A DNA stretch of 64,000 bases, from the IMG/VR virus record IMGVR_UViG_3300049215_000771, positions 186,001-250,000 of that record; one strand, written 5' to 3'. Within the stretch, counting starts at the first letter, position 1. Each line of letters opens with the position of its first letter. Under the pieces are notes generated by a model. It was not told the origin of the DNA, did no database searches, and saw only the letters and a list, made by a program, of their open reading frames with translations. Made by a program: the position numbers and the translations under genes. Shown here piece after piece: positions 21,907 through 63,673 of the stretch.

Positions 21907-22926
21907 ATGCTGACCAATCTGACCGTCATCGAAACCGACCGCCGCCCCAACACCACCAGCGTCAAGCCCCTGGACTGGTACGACTACATTCTTGTATCTT
22001 TCAGCGGCGGCAAGGATTCCGTCGCCCTCGTCCTGAAACTTCTCAAAGATGGCGTCCCGACCAGCAAGATCGTCCTGATGCACCAGCACATCGACGGCGA
22101 GCCGGGCGTCGATGCCCCCTTCATGGACTGGCCTTGCACCCAGGGCTACTGCCGGGCCTTCGCCAAAGCCCTCAACCTCAAGCTGCTGTTCCAGTGGCGA
22201 CACGGCGGCTTCGAGAAGGAAATGACCAAGAACAACGCCCGTACCGCCCCCGTCAGCTTCGAGTACCTGAACGGCGGACGAGGCACCGCTGGCGGCGTCA
22301 AAGGCAAGATCAGCACCCGCCGCATGTTCCCCCAGGTCACGGCAGACCTCAGCAAGCGCTGGTGTTCCTCCACCCTGAAGATCGACGTTGCTGCCATCGC
22401 CATCAACAACGACCCGGCCTTCAAGGGCAAGAAAATCCTGTTCCTGACCGGCGAACGCCGCCAGGAATCCGCCGCTCGCTCCAAGTACGCCGAAATGGAA
22501 CAACACCGCACCCACTCCAACAAGCGCCACGTTGACCACTGGCGCATGGTCATCGACTGGACCGAGGAACAGGTCTGGAACATCATGCAGGAATTCAACG
22601 TCATCCCCCACCCCGCCTACCGCCTGGGCTGGGGCCGGGTGTCCTGCATGGCCTGCATCTTCGGCCTCGCCGATCAGTGGGCCTCCGTCCGCAAAATCGC
22701 CCCGGAACTGTTCGCCAAGATCGGCCACTACGAAGCCGACTTCGGCAAAACCATCCACCAGGGCAAAACCGTCACCCAACTGGCCGACAAAGGCACGCCG
22801 TTCGCCGAAACCAACAACCAGGCGCTCGTCGCTGAAGCCATGAGCGAAGATTACCCCTACGAAGTCATCACAACCAACTGGACCCTCCCCTCCGGTGCCT
22901 ACAAGCACGGCGGCGGGCCTTCCTAA
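21907..22926 (+). CDS. PAPS reductase family protein (PP-loop, possible DNA modification)
   Basis: SFSGGKDS; G.RRQES..RS; HPAY.LG..RVSC..CIF. Confidence 0.85.
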   Translation: MLTNLTVIETDRRPNTTSVKPLDWYDYILVSFSGGKDSVALVLKLLKDGVPTSKIVLMHQHIDGEPGVDAPFMDWPCTQGYCRAFAKALNLKLLFQWRHGGFEKEMTKNNARTAPVSFEYLNGGRGTAGGVKGKISTRRMFPQVTADLSKRWCSSTLKIDVAAIAINNDPAFKGKKILFLTGERRQESAARSKYAEMEQHRTHSNKRHVDHWRMVIDWTEEQVWNIMQEFNVIPHPAYRLGWGRVSCMACIFGLADQWASVRKIAPELFAKIGHYEADFGKTIHQGKTVTQLADKGTPFAETNNQALVAEAMSEDYPYEVITTNWTLPSGAYKHGGGPS

Positions 22927-37705: not shown

Positions 37706-37878
37706 AGGATTGTACCTGCACTGTCGGCTAAAGGTTGAGTGGCCCAGCCCGGCGCAAGCTGAAGCTGGGCCTCCCATATTCTCCCAAGCAGGCCAGGTCA
37801 GCCCTGGCCTGCTTCTCCCTGCGCCCAGCCTGTACAAATCTCAAAATATCACCATTAGACCATTGTACCCTAGCGGTT

Positions 37879-38051
37879 GCCTCCGCAACGCTCTAAGCCG
37901 AGAGGCGGGTAAACCTTGAAACCTGGATGCCAGTCCTGGCGGTAGGGGTGAGCGTGATTAGGCCAATTACACCCGACTGGCTTCAATGCCTGCATCGGTC
38001 CTGGCAGACTGGTGTGCCGTGGTGGTGTGGGTTCGAGTCCCACCGGAGGCT
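37879..38051 (+). ncRNA. tRNA-like RNA (acceptor stem and T arm with ~140-nt insert)
   Basis: GCCTCCG (37879-85) pairs with CGGAGGC (38044-50); T arm GTGGG-TTCGAGT-CCCAC; 5' end 7-8 nt after TACCCT of motif A. Confidence 0.7.
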
Positions 38052-40613: not shown

Positions 40614-40844
40614 ATGAAACAAATGGACCATGCGGCTTATCAACGCAAGTGCCGTGGTCTGCCAGAAGCGTCCCTTCGCTACATCTTGAAGGATGCGAAG
40701 GAAGCTATCGACGCCCAACCGTTCGGCGAGAACGCTGGTTACTACGCCGATGAAATCCACTACGCTGCAATGGAGTTGCGACGGCGAGGCCAGGAGGCCA
40801 GCGACCTTCCCCCACTTGTGAAGGACATAGGGATCAAATCATGA
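40614..40844 (+). CDS. conserved phage hypothetical protein
   Basis: L.YI..DA.EA ... G.Y.DE.HY...EL.RR. Confidence 0.7.
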   Translation: MKQMDHAAYQRKCRGLPEASLRYILKDAKEAIDAQPFGENAGYYADEIHYAAMELRRRGQEASDLPPLVKDIGIKS

Positions 40845-41344
40845 ACGTGGAACTTGTGAAGCGTCTGTTCGCCCACTTCGCCCCCGCCCCCGAAGTCAAG
40901 ATCGACAAGTACAGCGAGGATGGCTGTTGCCCTGCCATCATCATCGGCCCCTTCACCATCAGTCAGTCGCTTACCGTCGTCAAGGGGCTGAAGGGCGACC
41001 ACGAGGTTCCCAACTACAGCCTGGACGTTCACGTTGGCGACGGCGACATTATCGACCTGGCGACTGCCACGAACTTCGCCGACGTGGTTGTGGCTGCCGT
41101 CGAGAACTACGCCGGCTGGCTGGCACGGGCTGAACTGGACCGCATCGCTGACGACGCCTATGCCGCTGACCTGGAGAGCGAGCGTCTGGCCTTGCAAGCC
41201 GCCTTCAACGAGGGGCTGGAATACTACAGGACGACTGCCCCCGGCGAGCGTAGCAAGGACGCCAACCCCTACCCCCACGGCATCGAGCATTACTACAAGT
41301 GGGCGTCCGGCTACAGCCAGGGCGAGGCGGAAGCGGTGTTTTGA
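40841..41344 (+). CDS. hypothetical protein
   Basis: ATGA overlap. Confidence 0.7.
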   Translation: MNVELVKRLFAHFAPAPEVKIDKYSEDGCCPAIIIGPFTISQSLTVVKGLKGDHEVPNYSLDVHVGDGDIIDLATATNFADVVVAAVENYAGWLARAELDRIADDAYAADLESERLALQAAFNEGLEYYRTTAPGERSKDANPYPHGIEHYYKWASGYSQGEAEAVF

Positions 41345-42887: not shown

Positions 42888-43209
42888 CACGACAAGCCCC
42901 AGGCTGGCCCGGCCTGGGGCATTTTGGGAAATCCCCATCAGGTACAAACTTTCAAGTTGATGTTTTAGGCCATTGTACCCTAGCGGTTGGCCCGATGGCT
43001 GCCGGTGGCACGGTGGCATCGGACAACCTTCTGACGGCTCTAGGGGTAAGGGGCCGTATGGGGTTGCTGTGCTTGTGCGTTCGTCGCCACAACGACGCAT
43101 CGGCCTGCAATCTTTGCAACCATCCGTCAGAATTCTTGAAAGTTTCCGAACCTTGTTGGTTCGGCGCAGTCTTCCTTGCGGGTAGGACAGTCATACGGAG
43201 AATCGAGTC

Positions 43210-43575
43210 ATGTTGAAGCATCGTGTTGCGGTTATCATCCCCTCCACCGTCAAGGGCAACGAGCCGGCTCCTGCCGACCTGGTTGCCAAGTGGGTCAAGG
43301 CGGCGAAGATCAAGCTGGGAACCCTGTTCGGTGGCTTCACTGCCACGAAGGGCGAAGGCGGCTGGGTTTCCCCCGTCCACGGCTTGATTGAAGAGCCGGT
43401 CACTGTTGTCGCCGCCCACTGTGACGAAGAGGCTTTCAACCGTCACGCCCAGGACGTTCGTGAATTCGCCTTGACCGTCGCCGTGGCGCTGGAGCAGGAA
43501 GCCGTTTCCGTCCAGTTCGACAACACGCTGGAATTCGTCAGCGTGCCGCCCGCCGTCGCCGTCAACGTGGTCTGA
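43210..43575 (+). CDS. DUF3574/SAM-lyase-like protein
   Basis: FGG.T...G.GGW ... IEE...V ... EQEAV. Confidence 0.5.
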   Translation: MLKHRVAVIIPSTVKGNEPAPADLVAKWVKAAKIKLGTLFGGFTATKGEGGWVSPVHGLIEEPVTVVAAHCDEEAFNRHAQDVREFALTVAVALEQEAVSVQFDNTLEFVSVPPAVAVNVV

Positions 43576-43788
43576 TCGGAAGGCCAGGGTCGCCCACCCT
43601 GGCCTTTGTTGGTAATACCCTACAGGTACAAAGGCTGAAGCGTTGCTTTAGAGGTTTGTACCCTAGTGGTCGGGTGAAAACCCTCGCAACAACAATCCTG
43701 GGCGGCGAGCGCCGGCCCTTGTAAGTTTCCGAACCTTGTGGTCTTGTGAAGCGTCTTCCCTGCGAAGCATACGGAAAGGACAATAACC

Positions 43789-44601: not shown

Positions 44602-44922
44602 ATGACGAATCAAGAAGTCCTGGAACTGGCAACCTTGCGTCAACGTGGTCAAGCCGACAGCGATGAAGTGGGCGTTGACATTCGCACGCATCATCCGACG
44701 CTAGGGCATCAGGGCGGGTATCTGACCGTCGATGAAGCCGGCGAGAGTGTCAGCTTCCACTATGACGATCTATGGTTCACTGGCACGGGTTGGGAGTCGG
44801 AAGATAATCTCGGCCTCTACAACGAAGACGGCGACCGCAATGAAGATGCCGAAGTGCCCGAAGTGAGCGCAGCCGAATTCTCCGCTTGGTTCACGGGCGC
44901 TGACTGGAAGCTGCTCAACTAG
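44602..44922 (+). CDS. acidic hypothetical protein
   Basis: GAGG SD after motif A half. Confidence 0.65.
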   Translation: MTNQEVLELATLRQRGQADSDEVGVDIRTHHPTLGHQGGYLTVDEAGESVSFHYDDLWFTGTGWESEDNLGLYNEDGDRNEDAEVPEVSAAEFSAWFTGADWKLLN

Positions 44923-45015
44923 CTGGACAGGCCAGGGCTGACCCGCCCTGGCCCTTGTTGGCGGACAGCACCAGGTACAAACTTTCAAGTTGTAGCTTTA
45001 GACCATTGTACCTTA

Positions 45016-45315
45016 GTGGTCGTCCGACAAACAACTCCCCCTGACGGGGGAAACGCCGAGAGTCAAGAGGGAGGGATCGAAAGTGCCCCCGCAAGGGGCC
45101 GACCCGGAATAAGCGTTGCGGAGTAACCGGATGCAGTCTGCCTGGTCCTAACGGATAATGAGTAGCTACCCCAGGCCAACGCAGTCTCGACGCAAGCGAC
45201 GAAGAAGGGCAATCCTGAAGCCTTGAACGGGCGACTAAGCCGAAAGGCAGTCAGTCACCGGCTTACAACACGGTGCGACGAAGGGAGCAGGCAGGCCGCT
45301 GCTCCCTTCGTTCTT
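45016..45315 (+). ncRNA. candidate ~300-nt structured ncRNA
   Basis: between two motif A copies, no ORF, several GNRA hairpins, terminal 13-bp hairpin. Confidence 0.6.
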
Positions 45316-45409
45316 CAACCCAAGGTCCGGTACAATCCTTCAAGTTGATGATTTAAGCCTTTGTACCCTAACGGCTGTCGCCCGACACCTTCACTCAGGA
45401 GCCTTGACC

Positions 45410-45736
45410 ATGCGTTGCGAAGACTTCCCCTGCTGCGGCCACGAACCCGGTTGCTGCCCGAACTTCGACGAGGCGGGCCGGCAGACCGACATGGTTTGCA
45501 CCTGTGGCGCTCGCCTCCCCATCACGTCTCGCTACTCCATCTGTGAGGCGTGCCTCCGGGCCGGCGACGAGGACTTCGACGAGCCGCCCTTCGACGACGA
45601 GGACTTCGACGACGAGCCGGACCCGTTCCACGGCGACGACGCCGCAGCGGACGCCGATGCCCTGGCCTCCGCTGGCTGGGGCACGGATGAGGACTACGGC
45701 GGATACGAGGACTTCGGCGACTATTGGGGCGATTGA
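45410..45736 (+). CDS. Cys-rich/acidic small protein
   Basis: RCEDFPCCG..CC; DADALASAGWGTDEDYG. Confidence 0.7.
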   Translation: MRCEDFPCCGHEPGCCPNFDEAGRQTDMVCTCGARLPITSRYSICEACLRAGDEDFDEPPFDDEDFDDEPDPFHGDDAAADADALASAGWGTDEDYGGYEDFGDYWGD

Positions 45737-47875: not shown

Positions 47876-48637
47876 CTACAGGGATTCGAGGTAGTCGGCG
47901 AAGGTCCGCAATCGAGGCCACAAGAAAGGATTGAACAACATGCTCCCCACCGCCACATGATCGGCCCCGGCCCGAACATAATCCTTCACGTCCTGCAAAC
48001 ACGTCACCCCGCCACCCCCGATCAACGTCACTCGCCTGCCAAACTTGGCCCGGAAATTCTCGACAGCTACCAACGAAATTTTCTTCAGGGGCTTGCCGGA
48101 CTTCCCGCCCGCCTCACAAGGGATCGTGTTGCACAGATGGAAATAGCGAATGCCCTGGTCGAATAATGCCACCCCATCTTCCACAGGGCTGACCGGCGAC
48201 AACTTGGCAATGATCGTCTGCTTGAATCCATTGATGGTTCGGATGGGTAGATGATGAACTTTCTCGACAGCAGTGATGTTGGGACAAGAAAGATTCAACT
48301 CCACAGGCACATCCAACAACTTCGCCGTTTCCAACAAGTGAACCCACTCGTTGATGTTGAACCCGTGAATGCTCAAAATGCAGTCTTCAGGAACTCGATG
48401 CGTCCACAGGCCATAGTACCAGTGCTTCTTCCACAGGGAATGGATGCCGGGATTGGGCAGGCCCAGCTTGTTGACCCAGGACTGTTCCTGGAAGTTATAA
48501 CGAACGGTCGTGAGAATTTTCCAGACCCGCCACCAGAACCCACCACGATTCTGAACGGTATAAGTTCCCAGCGTTGGCGTGGCGTGACGGAAATGCAAGT
48601 AGTTGCCGAAGGGCGCAGACACGATCAGTTTCTTCAT
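47876..48637 (-). CDS. pyrD: dihydroorotate dehydrogenase-like FMN oxidoreductase
   Basis: N..GL.NPG; LN.SCPN; KLSP; NT...GG.SG.PL; IG.GGV......GAD.V.VGS. Confidence 0.8.
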   Translation of the reverse strand: MKKLIVSAPFGNYLHFRHATPTLGTYTVQNRGGFWWRVWKILTTVRYNFQEQSWVNKLGLPNPGIHSLWKKHWYYGLWTHRVPEDCILSIHGFNINEWVHLLETAKLLDVPVELNLSCPNITAVEKVHHLPIRTINGFKQTIIAKLSPVSPVEDGVALFDQGIRYFHLCNTIPCEAGGKSGKPLKKISLVAVENFRAKFGRRVTLIGGGGVTCLQDVKDYVRAGADHVAVGSMLFNPFLWPRLRTFADYLESL

Positions 48638-48721
48638 GGCATCCTCCTTACCCAAGGATACCAAAACCAAGACTAAATACAAGCAGTTCTAACACTGCTT
48701 TCAGCAGAAAGGAGTCTGCGC

Positions 48722-53689: not shown

Positions 53690-54337
53690 ATGAAAAAATA
53701 TCTTGCCTCCATCTTGTTTGTCGCCGCTCTCCTGGCCCTTATCATCGGTCGTGCCTTCATCGACACCACCCACCCCGACGCCTACGAAAATCAAGGCTTT
53801 GAATTCATCGCCCAACCCGACAACATCACCTGCGGCCCCACCAGCACCACCATGCTGCTCAAATACTACGGCAAAGATGTTACCATCGCCCAGGTCGAGA
53901 AAGAAACCCGCACCAAATGGTTTCACTGGAAAGGAGAAGACATCGGTATGACCGCCCCGGAATATGTAGAAATCGCCCTCCGTCGCTTTGGCGTCCCCGC
54001 CAAAATGCAACGAGGTAGTTTCAACAACCTCAAACATTATGTTTCCCAGGGCCGTCCCGTCATCGTCAACGTCCGCTCCGGGCAAACTACCTGGCATTAC
54101 GTCGTTGTCATCGGCTACACTAACGATCAAGTTATCTTGGCTGATCCCGGCGATGGCGCTCGGATCACCATCTCCGCTGAGAATTTCCTTGGTTGTTGGT
54201 CGTTCCAGACAGATATGGATGGAACTGTTTGCGGGCATTCTGATCCGCTGTGGGGGCGAGTCGATCCACTCAAAGATTTGCTGTGGGCTGGTGAAGTGTA
54301 CCCCTACACCATGATCGTACCGGAAAGGAAGAAATGA
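53690..54337 (+). CDS. C39-like cysteine peptidase, membrane anchored
   Basis: Q.....CGPTS..MLL.YYG; HYVVV.GY; L.DP. Confidence 0.8.
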   Translation: MKKYLASILFVAALLALIIGRAFIDTTHPDAYENQGFEFIAQPDNITCGPTSTTMLLKYYGKDVTIAQVEKETRTKWFHWKGEDIGMTAPEYVEIALRRFGVPAKMQRGSFNNLKHYVSQGRPVIVNVRSGQTTWHYVVVIGYTNDQVILADPGDGARITISAENFLGCWSFQTDMDGTVCGHSDPLWGRVDPLKDLLWAGEVYPYTMIVPERKK

Positions 54338-59363: not shown

Positions 59364-60536
59364 TCAAAGTATATCGGACACTGGCGGGGTCCGCAAGATC
59401 ACCCTGCCAAAATTCCGGGGACCAACTTTGACCACTTGGCCCGGACATACAGAACCATCTTGGTCTACTTTCTGTCCATCAACACTCACGCCGCCCTGCG
59501 CCAGCAAACGCTTGGCTTCTGTTTTACTGCATTTGCGAATGGCGATAATCGCCTGCATAAGTGTATCCACTTGCACAAAGGGAATATCTTTCGGGACTTC
59601 CTTCTGCACAATGGTCTTGGTGAAATGCTCCCAGGCGGCATTGGCTTCTGCTTGGCCGTATAGCTGCTTTGTAATATCCCAGGCCAGTTGCATTTTTTCT
59701 TCCATCGGACCAAGCACAGCGGCCTCGTTCGGCTCCGAGGACAACAAGGGAATCCACTCCCTCATTACGTCGTCGGAAATACTCATCACCTTGCCGAAAA
59801 CATCCACCGGATCGTCGTCCAGCCAGATGCAGTTGTTGTAAGATTTACTCATCTTCCTGCCATCCGTGCCGTTGATGATCGGCGTCAGCACGGACAACTG
59901 CGGCTTCTGGCCCCATTGTTCCTGAAGGAACCGGGCGATCTGGAAGTTGAAGAGTTGATCTTGACCGCCGATCTCAATTTCTGTTTTCAGGGCGACTGAA
60001 TCCCAGCCCTGGAGAATGGGCACCAGAAGTTCGTGGAGGCCGAGCGGGTTGTTGTTTTGCATCCTGGTCTGGAAAGAAGCACGAGCCAGCATTTGCTGGA
60101 CGGTGAACTTGCTCGCCAGAAGCATCATATCCGGCACTTTCATTTGATTGAAAGATGCCTCCCCGTTGTTGAAGATCGGGATGTCATGTCCCAAAATACG
60201 CCGGACCATGACCGTGATATGGCTGGCGTTATTCAGGACTTCTTCTTCGGTAAGAATAGGCCGTGTGGTATCCCGGCCAGAAGGGTCGCCCATTTGCGCC
60301 GTGAAGGTGCCGATGACAATGGTGACATCGTGGCCATTGTCCTGAAATTTCTTGACGACTCGGAGCGGTACAAGATGTCCCAGGTGCAAGCGGGGGAAGG
60401 TCGGATCAATACCGAACTTGACCCTGGCTTTTGTGGGAATGGTGTTGTGTGTTGGGCAGCCGTAGGGGGCAAACGAAGCATCAATGGGGAACTTCGTACA
60501 ATTGAGCGTCAGTCCGTGTTCTGTCCATTTCTTCAT
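59364..60536 (-). CDS. tyrS: tyrosine--tRNA ligase
   Basis: G.DPT...LHLGH (HIGH), GG.DQ.FN, KMSKS, C-terminal S4 domain. Confidence 0.95.
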   Translation of the reverse strand: MKKWTEHGLTLNCTKFPIDASFAPYGCPTHNTIPTKARVKFGIDPTFPRLHLGHLVPLRVVKKFQDNGHDVTIVIGTFTAQMGDPSGRDTTRPILTEEEVLNNASHITVMVRRILGHDIPIFNNGEASFNQMKVPDMMLLASKFTVQQMLARASFQTRMQNNNPLGLHELLVPILQGWDSVALKTEIEIGGQDQLFNFQIARFLQEQWGQKPQLSVLTPIINGTDGRKMSKSYNNCIWLDDDPVDVFGKVMSISDDVMREWIPLLSSEPNEAAVLGPMEEKMQLAWDITKQLYGQAEANAAWEHFTKTIVQKEVPKDIPFVQVDTLMQAIIAIRKCSKTEAKRLLAQGGVSVDGQKVDQDGSVCPGQVVKVGPRNFGRVILRTPPVSDIL

Positions 60537-61713: not shown

Positions 61714-62123
61714 TGTGGGTCCACCTTCTCCATCAGCGTTTCCTGCGATGAGTTGTTGCGATCAGCCCATAGCATCTGAACAGGATCGGCTGTAGTGACG
61801 GTAATGATAACCTCACCTGCCAATTTTTCATTAGCATCGGTTTTGGTGTACAGTTTGACTGCCGATTTGTCGGCATTGAACTCCAGGCGAAGCTGTTGTG
61901 TTTGGCCCTGCTGATCCTTGCCGGCCACGAACTGAGTGGCAACACCATCTTTGATGTCGATATAGACATCGTTGCACTCGTAACCCTTGCCATCAGGCCC
62001 GACGATCTGAAGGATATACCACCGACCCTCGATTTCCTTCAGGTCAGTGATACCCTTCGTCACGGGCTTGTTGCTGGAGCAGCCAACCAGGGCGAACAAG
62101 ATGATGGGAAGTAACTTTCTCAC
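61710..62123 (-). CDS. lipoprotein, lipocalin/TIGR03067-like
   Basis: LVGC lipobox; DLK.IEG.W. Confidence 0.55.
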   Translation of the reverse strand: MRKLLPIILFALVGCSSNKPVTKGITDLKEIEGRWYILQIVGPDGKGYECNDVYIDIKDGVATQFVAGKDQQGQTQQLRLEFNADKSAVKLYTKTDANEKLAGEVIITVTTADPVQMLWADRNNSSQETLMEKVDPQ

Positions 62124-63673
62124 TTTGGCCTCTGATGAGGGAAGGTGATGACATCCCTGATGGCGTCCGTCTCGGCGTAGAGCATGGCGAGGCGGTCGAT
62201 GCCAATGCCCAACCCTCCTGCGGGCGGCATCCCGACAATCAAGGCGTCAAGGAAGTCGTAGTCGATCCTTGGATCGTGTTGTCCCGGCTGGAGGCCCAAC
62301 TGCTTCTCGAAGTTGGCCTGTTGCACGTCGGGGTTGTTGAGTTCAGTGTAAGCGTTGGCGATCTCCATACCGTTGACGAACAACTCCCAGCGGTCACAAA
62401 TCCAGCCCTGCCACTGTTCGTCGTCACGAGGCTTCGCCAGTGGACAAAGGACGGATGGGTAGCCGAACACGAAGGTTGGCTCGGTCAACTGCGGCTGGAT
62501 GATCTTGTCGAACACAGCCTCCAGACGATCAACCAGCGGCGTCAACAGGGGCAGACCGGACTTGTGCGCCAGTTCTGCGTCCAGGTCGTGGTGCCACTGA
62601 ATGACGTACCTTGGGTCGCCCTGCATCAAACTAGGGCTGTTTGGATCGTACTGCCATTCCGGGGCAAGGACGTGTTCCAACAAGGTGATGTTGCAATACT
62701 CCTGAAAAAGATCGCCGTAGGTCGTCGTCCTGGCATTGGCGATGTTGTTTAGGCCGAGAGCGCCGGCGATCTGGCGAGTGATGTAGGCCATCGACTCGAC
62801 ATCACCGTAGGCTTCGTACAATTCGAGCATCGTAAACTCAGGATTGTGGGTCCGATCCACGCCCTCGTTCCTGAAGTTCTTGCCGATCTCGTAAATCTTC
62901 TCCATACCGCCAACGAGCAACTTCTTCAGGTACAACTCCGGGGCAATGCGAAGGTACAAGTTGGCGTTGTAGGCGTTGTGATGGGTTTGGAACGGACGAG
63001 CAGCGGCCCCACCTGCAATGGGTTGTAGGATTGGGGTTTCTACTTCCGTGAAGCCGTGCTTGTTGAGACACTGCCTGATCTTCCAGACCATCTCGCTCCG
63101 CTTCTGGAGAGTTTTCACCGCCCCTTCCCGGTAGATCAGTTCCAGGTGTCGGTTGCGGGAAAAGACTTCAGGATCGGTAATTCCGTGGAACTTGTCGGGA
63201 GGCGTAGCCAGGCTTTTGCAAAGCATGGTGATCTCGTTAATGCGAAGGCTGATCTCGCCGGTCCTGGTGGCCGTGAGGTAGCCTTGAACGCCAACGATGT
63301 CGCCCGGCAAGAGATTCTGGACGATGTACCAGGGCATCGGGTAATCGGTGCCATTGATGCTGCAAGAACTTACGCCGTCCCACAGGTCGCCCTTGGAAGC
63401 CCAAATCTGAATGGTTTCCGTGGAGTCCCGGAGATGGAAAAATACCAGCTTGCCGAAGTCATTCTTGGACATGACCCGGCCAGCAGCCTTGAATGTGACT
63501 TCCTTGTTGTCCTTGTGCGTCTCGAATTGCCGGCGAATGGTGTCGATGGGCGTGATGCCCTCGAACTTCTGGCCGTAGGGGTCCAGATCGCCGTGCATGA
63601 TGCCGGTCGAGAGTTGTGACAGGATTTCCCGCCTGCGGAGGCGGTCTTGGTAGAGTTGATCTGCGGTGTGCAT
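62120..63673 (-). CDS. lysS: lysine--tRNA ligase (class II)
   Basis: OB anticodon domain AGR.M....FGK..F; F.EVETP.LQ...GGA.ARPF.THHN; YLRIAPELYLK; FRNEG.D.THNPEFT.LE.Y; GMPP.GG.G.GIDRL. Confidence 0.97.
   Translation of the reverse strand: MHTADQLYQDRLRRREILSQLSTGIMHGDLDPYGQKFEGITPIDTIRRQFETHKDNKEVTFKAAGRVMSKNDFGKLVFFHLRDSTETIQIWASKGDLWDGVSSCSINGTDYPMPWYIVQNLLPGDIVGVQGYLTATRTGEISLRINEITMLCKSLATPPDKFHGITDPEVFSRNRHLELIYREGAVKTLQKRSEMVWKIRQCLNKHGFTEVETPILQPIAGGAAARPFQTHHNAYNANLYLRIAPELYLKKLLVGGMEKIYEIGKNFRNEGVDRTHNPEFTMLELYEAYGDVESMAYITRQIAGALGLNNIANARTTTYGDLFQEYCNITLLEHVLAPEWQYDPNSPSLMQGDPRYVIQWHHDLDAELAHKSGLPLLTPLVDRLEAVFDKIIQPQLTEPTFVFGYPSVLCPLAKPRDDEQWQGWICDRWELFVNGMEIANAYTELNNPDVQQANFEKQLGLQPGQHDPRIDYDFLDALIVGMPPAGGLGIGIDRLAMLYAETDAIRDVITFPHQRPK

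What the first reader, a model, noticed from the sequence alone, without database searches (positions are those of the whole stretch)
45016..45315. ~300-nt GNRA-rich ncRNA occupying a whole cassette
The region is bounded by motif A copies at 44974 and 45329 and has no ORF. It contains CCCCC-TGAC-GGGGG, CCCC-GCAA-GGGG, GCC-GAAA-GGC inside GACT/AGTC, and nested GCGTTG/CAACGC, GCCTGG/CCAGGC and CGAGA/TCTCG pairs. It ends in a 13-bp hairpin (ACGAAGGGAGCAG/CTGCTCCCTTCGT). It is treated like a gene by the cassette architecture, so it is probably a functional RNA.
Basis: partly seen in the sequence, partly recalled or inferred. Interest (0 to 1): 0.6.

Follow-up and report, generated by a model that had tools for sequence, protein, structure and literature searches.

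The report
Orphan structured RNA in huge phage
A roughly 300-base stretch of a giant bacteriophage genome has its own promoter-like motif and terminator-like hairpin but no protein-coding frame, is conserved in three related phage lineages with base-pair-preserving changes, and so is probably a new non-coding RNA gene whose job is still unknown.

Summary
Window 45013-45320 has no conserved ORF. It lies between two copies of a promoter-like motif and ends in a 13-bp hairpin.

The window belongs to a 532-673 kb uncultured phage. The RNA sits in a 20-kb block of small + strand genes, each with the same motif in front and a hairpin behind. This resembles the PeSL cassettes of T4-type phages.

I found homologues in three other metagenomic contigs, representing two further lineages. 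Each has the same motif before it and the same hairpin after it, but different neighbouring genes.

- **Conservation:** nucleotide identity (73%; 90% between two relatives) equals or exceeds that of adjacent coding genes.
- **Coding:** no reading frame is conserved.
- **Structure:** a hand-built model of ten helices is paired in 166 of 167 cells, with compensatory double changes in 19 of 50 pairs. The model was derived from these same sequences, and an unbiased two-sequence test was not significant.
- **Known families:** Rfam, ARAGORN and phage BLAST found nothing.
"GNRA-rich" is not beyond chance, and the GNRA loops and the CGAGA/TCTCG pairing are not conserved.

Verdict: a probable new structured phage RNA family of unknown function. 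My best guess is a trans-acting protein-binding or decoy RNA in an early or anti-defence gene block.

The parts
44930..44953 (+). Terminator-like hairpin of the upstream gene (44602-44922). It marks the end of the previous cassette.
   Evidence: GGCCAGGG...CCCTGGCC followed by CTTGTTGG. The same stem type precedes most motif A copies.
44974..45012 (+). Motif A, the promoter-like element in front of the RNA. It has the arms GGTACAA / TTGTACC around TTCAAGTTG..TTTAG.
   Evidence: 8 copies against 0 expected, all + strand. The alignment shows an invariant TTTAG and TTGTACC core 20-45 nt upstream of start codons elsewhere. The motif precedes the RNA in L133 and L135 too. It is not sigma-70-like by the scan tool.
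45013..45320 (+). The candidate non-coding RNA, about 300 nt. The 5' end is inferred at about 45010-45016 and the 3' end just after the hairpin.
   Evidence: No conserved ORF. Homologues: L133:1114-1424, L126:1-236, L135:627-950. No Rfam family.
45037..45050 (+). H1: 5-bp hairpin with a conserved UGAC loop, followed by the conserved GAAAC.
   Evidence: The stem is CCCCC:GGGGG in the window and L133, and CACCC:GGGUG in L135, a compensatory C-G to A-U change.
45054..45077 (+). 5' strands of the long-range closing stem: Pz 45054-45057, Py 45063-45067, Px 45073-45077. The conserved GGA lies in the loop between Py and Px.
   Evidence: These pair with 45230-45233, 45222-45226 and 45212-45216. Pz is CGCC:GGCG against CACC:GGUG. 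Py is UCAAG:CUUGA, CCAAU:GUUGG or CCCAA:UUG(u)GG. Px is GGGAU:AUCCU, GGCAC:GUGCC or GGCC:GGCC. The unconstrained MFE of L133 already contains all three.
45085..45099 (+). H2: variable hairpin, expanded to a three-way junction in L135.
   Evidence: GCCCC:GGGGC in the window against GGCCG:CGGCC in L133 and L126, giving two compensatory pairs. The L135 insert appears.
45100..45122 (+). Conserved block CCGACCCGGAATAAGCGTTGCGG.
   Evidence: One mismatch between the window, L133 and L126. GCGTTG has three possible partners (CAACGC, CGACG, or a local G(U/C)AAC), so the pairing is unresolved.
45141..45175 (+). H3c: 5-bp stem closing a 25-nt loop (45146-45170) that is 100% identical in the window, L133 and L126. 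It is absent from L135.
   Evidence: The base pair changes from C-G to G-C (CCUGG:CCAGG against GCUGG:CCAGC).
45183..45233 (+). Conserved block ..CGACGCAAGCGACGAAGAAGGGCA, then the 3' strands of Px (45212-45216), Py (45222-45226) and Pz (45230-45233).
45233..45252 (+). GAAA-tetraloop hairpin that is specific to this phage, so an insertion.
   Evidence: Missing from L133 and L126 as a 14-nt gap.
45256..45275 (+). H6: conserved 3' hairpin with a CACC:GGUG base.
   Evidence: Present in all four sequences. The inner part differs: CACCG:CGGUG against CACC-UGC:GCA-N-GGUG.
45278..45311 (+). 13-bp terminal hairpin, a likely terminator or 3' stabiliser. The U-tract is weak (TCTTCAAC).
   Evidence: Several stem positions show compensatory changes across the four sequences. 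It is not called by the strict terminator scan because it has fewer than 5 T.
45329..45367 (+). The next motif A copy, the promoter-like element of the following gene (45411-45736).

Best explanation
Window 45013-45320 (+) is a stand-alone gene for a structured non-coding RNA of about 300 nt. It belongs to a family not yet described and is carried by a huge phage (532-673 kb contigs).

**Shown**
- It occupies one slot in an array of cassettes, each with a promoter-like motif, a payload and a hairpin.
- It has no conserved reading frame.
- It is conserved as a unit in two further phage lineages while its neighbours are shuffled.
- Its stems carry compensatory changes.

**Inferred fold**
- A CA-rich 5' leader, then hairpin H1 with a conserved UGAC loop.
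- A three-part long-range stem (Pz-Py-Px) with a conserved GGA / purine-rich internal loop. This stem closes a multi-helix core.
- A core whose loops are invariant between close lineages but replaced in the third lineage.
- A 3' hairpin H6 and a 13-bp terminal hairpin.

**Inferred mechanism**
The RNA is made from the block-specific promoter, probably early in infection. It then acts in trans as a protein-binding scaffold or decoy through its invariant single-stranded loops. The gene block looks like a host-takeover or anti-defence region, so a counter-defence or host-factor-sequestering role is the most likely single guess.

**My odds**
- Real functional ncRNA gene: about 0.8.
- Works by binding a protein rather than by antisense pairing: about 0.35.
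- Anti-defence role: about 0.2.
For: - **Layout:** motif A occurs 8 times against 0 expected, all on the + strand and upstream of genes.
- **Homologues:** L126 (E 5e-39), L133 (E 2e-47) and L135 (nhmmer 5e-9). Each is flanked by motif A and a strong hairpin.
- **Shuffled neighbours:** the neighbouring genes differ between lineages.
- **Conservation:** ncRNA identity is 72.7-73.6%, against 65-76% for adjacent genes. For L133 against L126 it is 90.4%, against 79.5% for p121.
- **Not coding:** there are stops in all frames, no shared frame, and mismatches by codon position of 25/25/18.
- **Structure:** 166 of 167 cells are paired and 19 of 50 pairs have two-sided changes. Slid controls give 30-46% paired and 0-6 such pairs.
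- **Energetics:** the model lies within 3-7 kcal/mol of the MFE for the window and L133, and the L133 MFE contains Pz, Py and Px unprompted.
- **Strand:** RNAalifold places G-U pairs on the + strand.
- **Context:** the adjacent p121 has a SAM-lyase-like fold.
Against: - There are no transcript data.
- The promoter role of motif A is inferred, and it does not fit sigma-70.
- The 3' hairpin lacks a good U-tract.
- The single-sequence fold energy is unremarkable.
- Only three lineages exist, so covariation has little statistical power. The helices were chosen by eye from the same sequences.
- An automatic helix search on the window/L133 alignment was not better than column shuffles: 30 of 300 shuffles reached the observed number of helices with at least 2 compensatory pairs.
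- A structure-aware pairwise alignment with L135 recovered only H1, part of H2, H6 and the terminator.
- The central domain is not recognisable in L135.
- Nothing identifies a partner protein or target.
Confidence: 0.6

Rival explanations
1. The RNA is real but works by base pairing. The invariant loops, such as the 25-nt loop or AAGCGUUGCGGAG, would anneal to phage or host RNAs to control translation or stability.
For: Blocks of 100% identity between lineages that are 27% divergent overall fit pairing with a conserved target. Four + strand sites complementary to the GCGUUGCGG block cluster within 1.4 kb at 37.9-39.3 kb.
Against: The 8-mer is not enriched in the window (5 against 3.5 expected), and its flanks give no extended pairing. 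No match of 13 nt or more exists anywhere in the window. The host genome is unknown.
Confidence: 0.15
2. It mimics a host CRISPR repeat or another defence RNA, as an RNA anti-CRISPR or pseudo-antitoxin-type decoy. H1 plus the GAAAC tail would be the mimic.
For: H1 is a GC stem with a tetraloop and an A-rich tail. The loop and flanks are conserved and the stem covaries. The RNA stands alone with its own promoter and terminator, like the Racr units described in PMC10651486. The gene block may be anti-defence.
Against: No Rfam CRISPR-DR model matched even at E <= 10. A Racr needs only about 30-40 nt, not 300. A similar CA-rich leader plus GC hairpin heads the Gp96-like mRNA, so H1 may be a general 5' element. 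The host and its repeats are unknown.
Confidence: 0.07
3. It acts only in cis, as a long leader, attenuator or transcriptional insulator for the downstream gene, or as a spacer in the cassette array.
For: Other cassettes have long ORF-free leaders (42980-43209 and 37873-37985). The 5' end resembles the leaders of neighbouring mRNAs.
Against: The downstream gene differs in all four loci, and a full motif A copy separates it from the RNA each time. A strong hairpin ends the unit.
Confidence: 0.07
4. It is not an RNA gene but a DNA-level element, or the conserved remnant of a former protein gene or micro-ORF. A DNA-level element could be a protein-binding, recombination or replication site.
For: An SD-like GGAGG is conserved, and the window has a 9-codon GTG ORF after it. 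The cassette array is recombinogenic by analogy with PeSLs (PMC2839356).
Against: No start codon or frame is shared between lineages. No iterons or repeats lie inside the unit, and there is no second copy in the window. Compensatory changes in stems are not expected for a DNA site or a dead gene.
Confidence: 0.08

Closest known systems
PeSL cassettes (promoter-early stem-loop) of T4-type phages (PMC2839356, PMC4122927)
   Same: A conserved composite of a GC stem-loop terminator plus a promoter motif is repeated between small genes of unknown function in a plastic region. Each payload is transcriptionally insulated. Relatives differ by insertion, loss and reordering of whole cassettes. That is what is seen between the window, L126, L133 and L135.
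   Different: Here the motif does not fit sigma-70 and has its own inverted arms GGTACAA/TTGTACC. The phage is a huge uncultured one, not T4-like. The payload of this cassette is an RNA, not an ORF. Mini-circles and promoter activity are untested.
Stand-alone phage non-coding RNAs of unknown function, such as the ncRNAs annotated in jumbo phage PA5oct (PMC7318152 abstract) and the T4 small stable RNAs C and D (from my own knowledge)
   Same: Phage-encoded, ORF-free, with own transcription signals, and no known target.
   Different: No sequence or Rfam relationship. This RNA is longer (about 300 nt) and has a multi-domain fold with comparative support.
RNA anti-CRISPRs (Racr; PMC10651486)
   Same: A solitary structured RNA unit in a phage genome with its own promoter and terminator, possibly inside a counter-defence gene block. 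The 5' hairpin with an A-rich tail has the general shape of a class 1 CRISPR repeat.
   Different: No similarity to any CRISPR repeat model was found. The RNA is ten times longer than a repeat, and most of its conserved sequence lies outside H1.
tmRNA
   Same: Huge phages often carry tmRNAs. This RNA has a long-range stem enclosing a core. One block (GCAA[A/G]CGACGAAGAAGGG) reads A-N/S-D-E-E-G, like the start of the E. coli tag (comparison from memory).
   Different: ARAGORN found no tmRNA, and Rfam tmRNA models gave no hit on the RNA. There is no tRNA-like domain, T-arm or CCA end. The frame and stop codon are not conserved, because an indel sits after GGGCA and L133 has no stop.

Membership tests
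Any Rfam 15 family (including RNase P, SRP, 6S, tmRNA, group I/II introns, riboswitches, GOLLD/ROOL/HEARO/raiA, CRISPR-DR) | Covariance-model score at or above the family's gathering threshold | tested here: not met
   0 hits in the whole window at gathering. At E <= 10 the only local hit is mir-25 noise on the neighbouring terminator. The homologues L133, L135 and L126 gave only noise below threshold.
tmRNA | tRNA-like domain (acceptor stem, T-arm, CCA) | tested here: not met
   ARAGORN found no tRNA or tmRNA in the window. No T-loop or acceptor pairing can be seen in the sequence.
tmRNA | Tag reading frame with a conserved resume codon, frame and stop | tested here: not met
   The tag-like start is conserved, but an indel shifts the frame. 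L133 and L126 have no nearby in-frame stop.
PeSL-type regulatory cassette array | Repeated composite of a stem-loop plus a conserved promoter motif between small ORFs in a plastic region | tested here: met
   About 13 motif A copies in 27-48 kb, all + strand, most preceded by a GC hairpin and followed within 20-45 nt by an SD and start codon.
PeSL-type regulatory cassette array | Sigma-70-like -35/-10 promoter | tested here: not met
   The consensus scan found no sigma-70-type site at any motif A copy in 42.8-47.8 kb. The spacing of the possible hexamers is wrong.
PeSL-type regulatory cassette array | Cassette shuffling between related phages at the repeated motifs | tested here: met
   Gene order around the RNA differs in the window, L126, L133 and L135, with breakpoints at motif A copies.
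PeSL-type regulatory cassette array | Promoter and terminator activity; mini-circle formation | not testable with these tools
   Needs reporter assays and inverse PCR on infected cells.
RNA anti-CRISPR (Racr) | Sequence and structure mimicry of the host's CRISPR repeat | not testable with these tools
The only indirect test is that no Rfam CRISPR-DR model matched.
CsrB/RsmZ-type protein sponge | Many GGA / A(N)GGA motifs, enriched over background, in loops | tested here: not met
   GGA occurs 8, 8 and 7 times against 8.0, 9.4 and 9.7 expected in the three full-length RNAs. ANGGA is not enriched.
Riboswitch / cis-regulatory leader | Constant association with, and read-through into, one downstream gene family | tested here: not met
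   The four loci have four different downstream genes, each behind its own motif A.
Protein-coding gene / small ORF | Conserved open frame and codon-position bias of substitutions | tested here: not met
   Stops in all six frames of the window copy, no shared frame, and mismatches of 25/25/18 by position.

The most novel reading that the evidence does not exclude
The RNA is a modular phage ribonucleoprotein or decoy RNA. A conserved scaffold (H1, the Pz-Py-Px stem, H6 and the terminal hairpin) would present an exchangeable central 'specificity' domain. That domain is invariant between two lineages and wholly replaced in a third, even though the proteins of the third are no more divergent. This is the pattern expected if the core tracks a host-specific partner such as a defence nuclease, an RNA-binding protein or a host RNA. 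It would be a new class of RNA-based counter-defence or host-takeover factor in huge phages.
Probability: 0.15. Interest if true: 0.75.

Novelty: new member of a known kind. Interest (0 to 1): 0.45.

Why it matters
Few structured RNAs of 300 nt or so are known from phages, and almost none from the huge uncultured phages. A conserved RNA with its own expression signals, sitting among likely host-takeover genes, is a concrete and clonable candidate for an RNA-based phage-host interaction. It also shows that PeSL-like cassette arrays exist outside T4-type phages and can carry RNA genes as payloads.

The family is rare in the databases searched: four sequences in three lineages. Its general importance is therefore uncertain.

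Tried and rejected
**Searches that found nothing**
- Rfam at gathering and at E <= 10 on the window and the homologues gave nothing.
- ARAGORN found no tRNA or tmRNA.
- BLASTN of three versions against INPHARED phages gave no match.
- Exact-pattern scans with conserved blocks: IMG/VR returned only the window's own contig. The metagenome and GTDB scans returned only chance 19-mers.
- Neighbour-protein scans of IMG/VR returned only the window's own contig or phages without the RNA.
- More distant relatives of the Gp96-like and p121 proteins (L127, L131, L132, L136, L137, L151) lack the RNA.
- LR756511 shares only the AAA ATPase gene.

**Ideas rejected**
- tmRNA: the tag-like start is there, but there is no tRNA-like domain and no conserved frame.
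- RNase P or SRP resemblance seen by eye: no model support.
- CsrA sponge and 'GNRA-rich': no enrichment.
- DGR template or second copy: no paralogue in the window.
- The RNAalifold helix CGACCCG:CGGGCG: it competes with Pz and has less covariation.

**Analyses that were uninformative**
- RNAduplex target search.
- A shift-tolerant covariation test, which inflated false 'doubles'.
- mafft-qinsi was not installed.
- My own LocARNA-like aligner recovered only the terminal elements for L135.

**Not attempted or not obtained**
- No covariance model was built. A 300-position model would exceed the calibration limit, and only session loci could be searched.
- Two closer p121 contigs (P0122, P0125) had no retrievable DNA.

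Full report
**Where the window comes from.** The window is identical to part of IMG/VR contig IMGVR_UViG_3300049215_000771 (532,729 bp). The same sequence lies on a 673-kb ENA scaffold. It encodes two aminoacyl-tRNA synthetases. Its only relative among deposited phages is the 595-kb uncultured phage LR756511, which shares just an AAA/RuvB-like ATPase at 50% identity. The window is therefore part of a huge uncultured phage. Composition divides it into three parts. The finding lies in a 60% GC block at about 27-48 kb, flanked by DNA of about 52% GC.

**The observation.** Motif A is real. Eight near-perfect copies occur against none expected, all on the + strand. A profile search finds about 13 copies, all inside 27-48 kb. 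Aligned, the copies share an invariant TTTAG-N4/5-TTGTACC core, usually with a left arm GGTACAA. Most are preceded by a GC-rich hairpin with a T-rich tail, and are followed 20-45 nt later by a Shine-Dalgarno sequence and a start codon. The block is thus a string of insulated cassettes, each a hairpin, a promoter-like motif and a small gene. The motif does not fit sigma-70 spacing, so which polymerase reads it is unknown.

The unit at 45013-45320 is the one cassette here with no gene. Only mechanical ORFs of 36 and 41 aa exist, all six frames carry stops, and the gene caller used for the ENA scaffold left 488 nt uncalled at this spot. GNRA motifs are not enriched (17 observed, 16.3 +/- 3.2 expected). 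The predicted folding energy is ordinary (z = -1.05).

**Homologues.** Direct DNA searches failed in phage records, IMG/VR, JGI metagenomes and GTDB genomes. Going through the neighbouring proteins worked. A 67%-identical relative of the Kyano_Gp96-like protein lies on a 3.5-kb MAG contig (L126). The first 236 nt of that contig align to the 3' three-quarters of the RNA (74% identity, E 5e-39). Relatives of the 121-aa protein at 43210-43575 led to two more contigs. L133 carries a full-length copy (73% identity, E 2e-47). L135 carries a divergent full-length copy (nhmmer E 5e-9), and L134 overlaps L135.

In every case motif A stands in front of the RNA, and a 12-13-bp hairpin plus the next motif A stand behind it. 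The neighbours differ between loci:

| Locus | Gene order around the RNA |
|---|---|
| Window | p121 - Gp96-like - p120 - RNA - Cys-rich protein |
| L126 | RNA - p77 - p121 - Gp96-like |
| L133 | DUF6011 protein - RNA - p121 |
| L135 | p123 (the p121 homologue) - RNA - a 98-aa protein |

The RNA therefore behaves as an independent cassette that is kept while the array is reshuffled. This matches the PeSL-mediated modular shuffling described for T4-type phages (PMC2839356).

**Is it under selection, and is it coding?** Nucleotide identity of the RNA between the window and L133 or L126 is 72.7-73.6%. The adjacent protein genes show 65-76%. Between L133 and L126 the RNA is 90.4% identical, against 79.5% for p121. 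Conservation is patchy. Blocks of 12-33 nt are 100% identical, including a 25-nt hairpin loop, and they are separated by variable stems and indels. No reading frame is shared, a 14-nt hairpin is present only in the window, and mismatches fall 25/25/18 over the three codon positions. This is the pattern of a non-coding functional sequence.

**Structure.** RNAalifold on the three close sequences supports H1, H2, the stem closing the 25-nt loop, H6 and the terminal hairpin, with 7 compensatory pairs. Inspection of the variable positions revealed a better long-range pairing than RNAalifold's. Three short helices join the region just after H1 to the region just before H6:

| Helix | Window | L133 | L135 |
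|---|---|---|---|
| Pz | CGCC:GGCG | CACC:GGUG | absent |
| Py | UCAAG:CUUGA | CCAAU:GUUGG | CCCAA:UUG(u)GG |
| Px | GGGAU:AUCCU | GGCAC:GUGCC | GGCC:GGCC |

A conserved (A/C)(A/G)GGA sits in the internal loop between Py and Px. The unconstrained MFE of L133 already contains all three helices. Forcing the model costs 3-7 kcal/mol in the window and L133, and 15 kcal/mol in L135.

Over ten helices and up to four sequences, 166 of 167 cells are standard pairs. Of the 50 pairs, 19 show changes on both sides, 1 shows a one-sided change, and 1 has a single broken cell. Sliding the 3' strands by 1-3 nt gives 30-46% pairing and 0-6 such pairs.

Three caveats apply:
- The helices were picked from these same sequences.
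- Only three lineages exist.
- An unbiased search for compensated helices in the window/L133 alignment was not better than column shuffles, with 30 of 300 shuffles reaching the observed count.

The covariation is suggestive, not proven. The pairing of the conserved GCGUUG is unresolved, since three partners are possible.

**A modular pattern.** The proteins of the L135 phage are about as divergent from the window as those of L133 (p121: 68% against 71% amino-acid identity; 73% against 76% nucleotide identity). Even so, the central domain of the L135 RNA is unrecognisable. That includes the 25-nt loop that is invariant elsewhere, and H2 is expanded into a three-way junction. The 5' leader, H1, Py, Px, H6 and the terminal hairpin persist. 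So either the core was swapped, or it tracks a partner that differs in that phage or host.

**What it is not.** No Rfam family matches the window copy or the homologues. ARAGORN finds no tmRNA. The tmRNA-like 'A-N/S-D-E-E-G' stretch has no conserved frame or stop and no tRNA-like domain. GGA motifs are not enriched, so it is not a CsrB-type sponge. No second copy exists in the window, so it is not a DGR template or a repeat. The downstream gene is never the same, so it is not a leader or riboswitch.

**Likely role.** The block carries small genes of unknown function. AlphaFold models the consistently linked p121 with high confidence (pLDDT 92). Its best structural matches are phage SAM lyase (6zm9, E 2.5e-6, TM 0.64) and SAM-AMP lyase. 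These enzymes act against host restriction and CRISPR signalling. This is fold-level evidence only. Relatives of the block in smaller phage-like contigs carry ArdC-like, ParB-like and methyltransferase genes. This points to an early host-takeover or anti-defence region.

I therefore favour a trans-acting RNA that presents its invariant loops to a protein, as a scaffold or decoy. An antisense regulator is the main alternative. A Racr-like repeat mimic is a minor one, because the CA-rich leader plus GC hairpin layout of H1 also heads the Gp96-like mRNA. None of these mechanisms is shown.

**Verdict.** This is a real and probably functional new phage RNA family of unknown function, in a PeSL-like cassette array. 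Interest is moderate: the object is new and testable, but it is rare and has no mechanism yet.

Noticed in passing
window 27000-48000 (for example 28719, 30493, 32468, 34016, 37832, 42941, 43623, 44547, 44974, 45329, 45788, 46697, 47217): An array of about 13 promoter-like motif A copies lies on the + strand, each usually behind a GC hairpin. It is confined to a 60% GC block, and the flanks are about 52% GC. It resembles the PeSL cassettes of T4-type phages but is not sigma-70-like. A 46-kb IMG/VR contig (L151) shows many weak matches to the motif core.
   Followed up: partly
window 43210-43575 (+): This 121-aa protein has no Pfam family (phrog_3543, unknown function). Its AlphaFold model (pLDDT 92) best matches phage SAM lyase 6zm9 (E 2.5e-6, TM 0.64), then SAM-AMP lyase and the CutA/PII folds. 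No sequence-level PDB match exists. It lies within 1.5 kb of the RNA in all four lineages, but the loci were fetched through it or its neighbour.
   Followed up: partly
window about 43676-43720; L126 about 1085-1130: The 5' UTR of the Kyano_Gp96-like gene holds a block of about 45 nt (CA-rich run plus a GC-rich palindromic stretch) that is almost identical between two phages about 29% divergent in the gene itself. This is a second conserved non-coding element, probably a leader structure.
   Followed up: no
window 42980-43209 and 37873-37985: Long ORF-free leaders of 230 and 110 nt lie between a motif A copy and the next start codon. The second begins with the hairpins GTTGC-CTCC-GCAAC and GCC-GAGA-GGC.
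   Followed up: no
window 37883, 38537, 38899, 39248 (+): Four CCGCAACG sites, extending to 10-12 nt, are complementary to the RNA's invariant AAGCGUUGCGGAG and cluster within 1.4 kb. The 8-mer is not enriched window-wide (5 against 3.5 expected), and the flanks add no pairing.
   Followed up: partly
window 59364-60536 (-) and 62120-63673 (-): Two phage-encoded aminoacyl-tRNA synthetases are present: class Ib (Tyr/Trp type, with an S4 domain) and class II (Asp/Lys/Asn type, with an OB anticodon domain). No tRNA gene lies in the window.
   Followed up: no
window 45411-45736 (+): A small protein has a Cys-rich N-terminus (C-x4-CCGH-x3-CC) and a very acidic tail with repeated DEDFD. It matches no Pfam or PHROG family and sits immediately downstream of the RNA.
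   Followed up: no
window 1-27000: There is a strong negative GC skew and positive AT skew on the + strand from about 12 to 27 kb, with an abrupt change at about 27 kb. The 47876-48682 (-) ORF is dihydroorotate-dehydrogenase-like, 53690-54337 (+) is C39-peptidase-like, and 21907-22926 (+) is PAPS-reductase-like.
   Followed up: no
window 40841-41344 (+): The C-terminal 50 residues weakly match ribosome modulation factor (Pfam RMF, E 0.008, below the cut-off).
   Followed up: no
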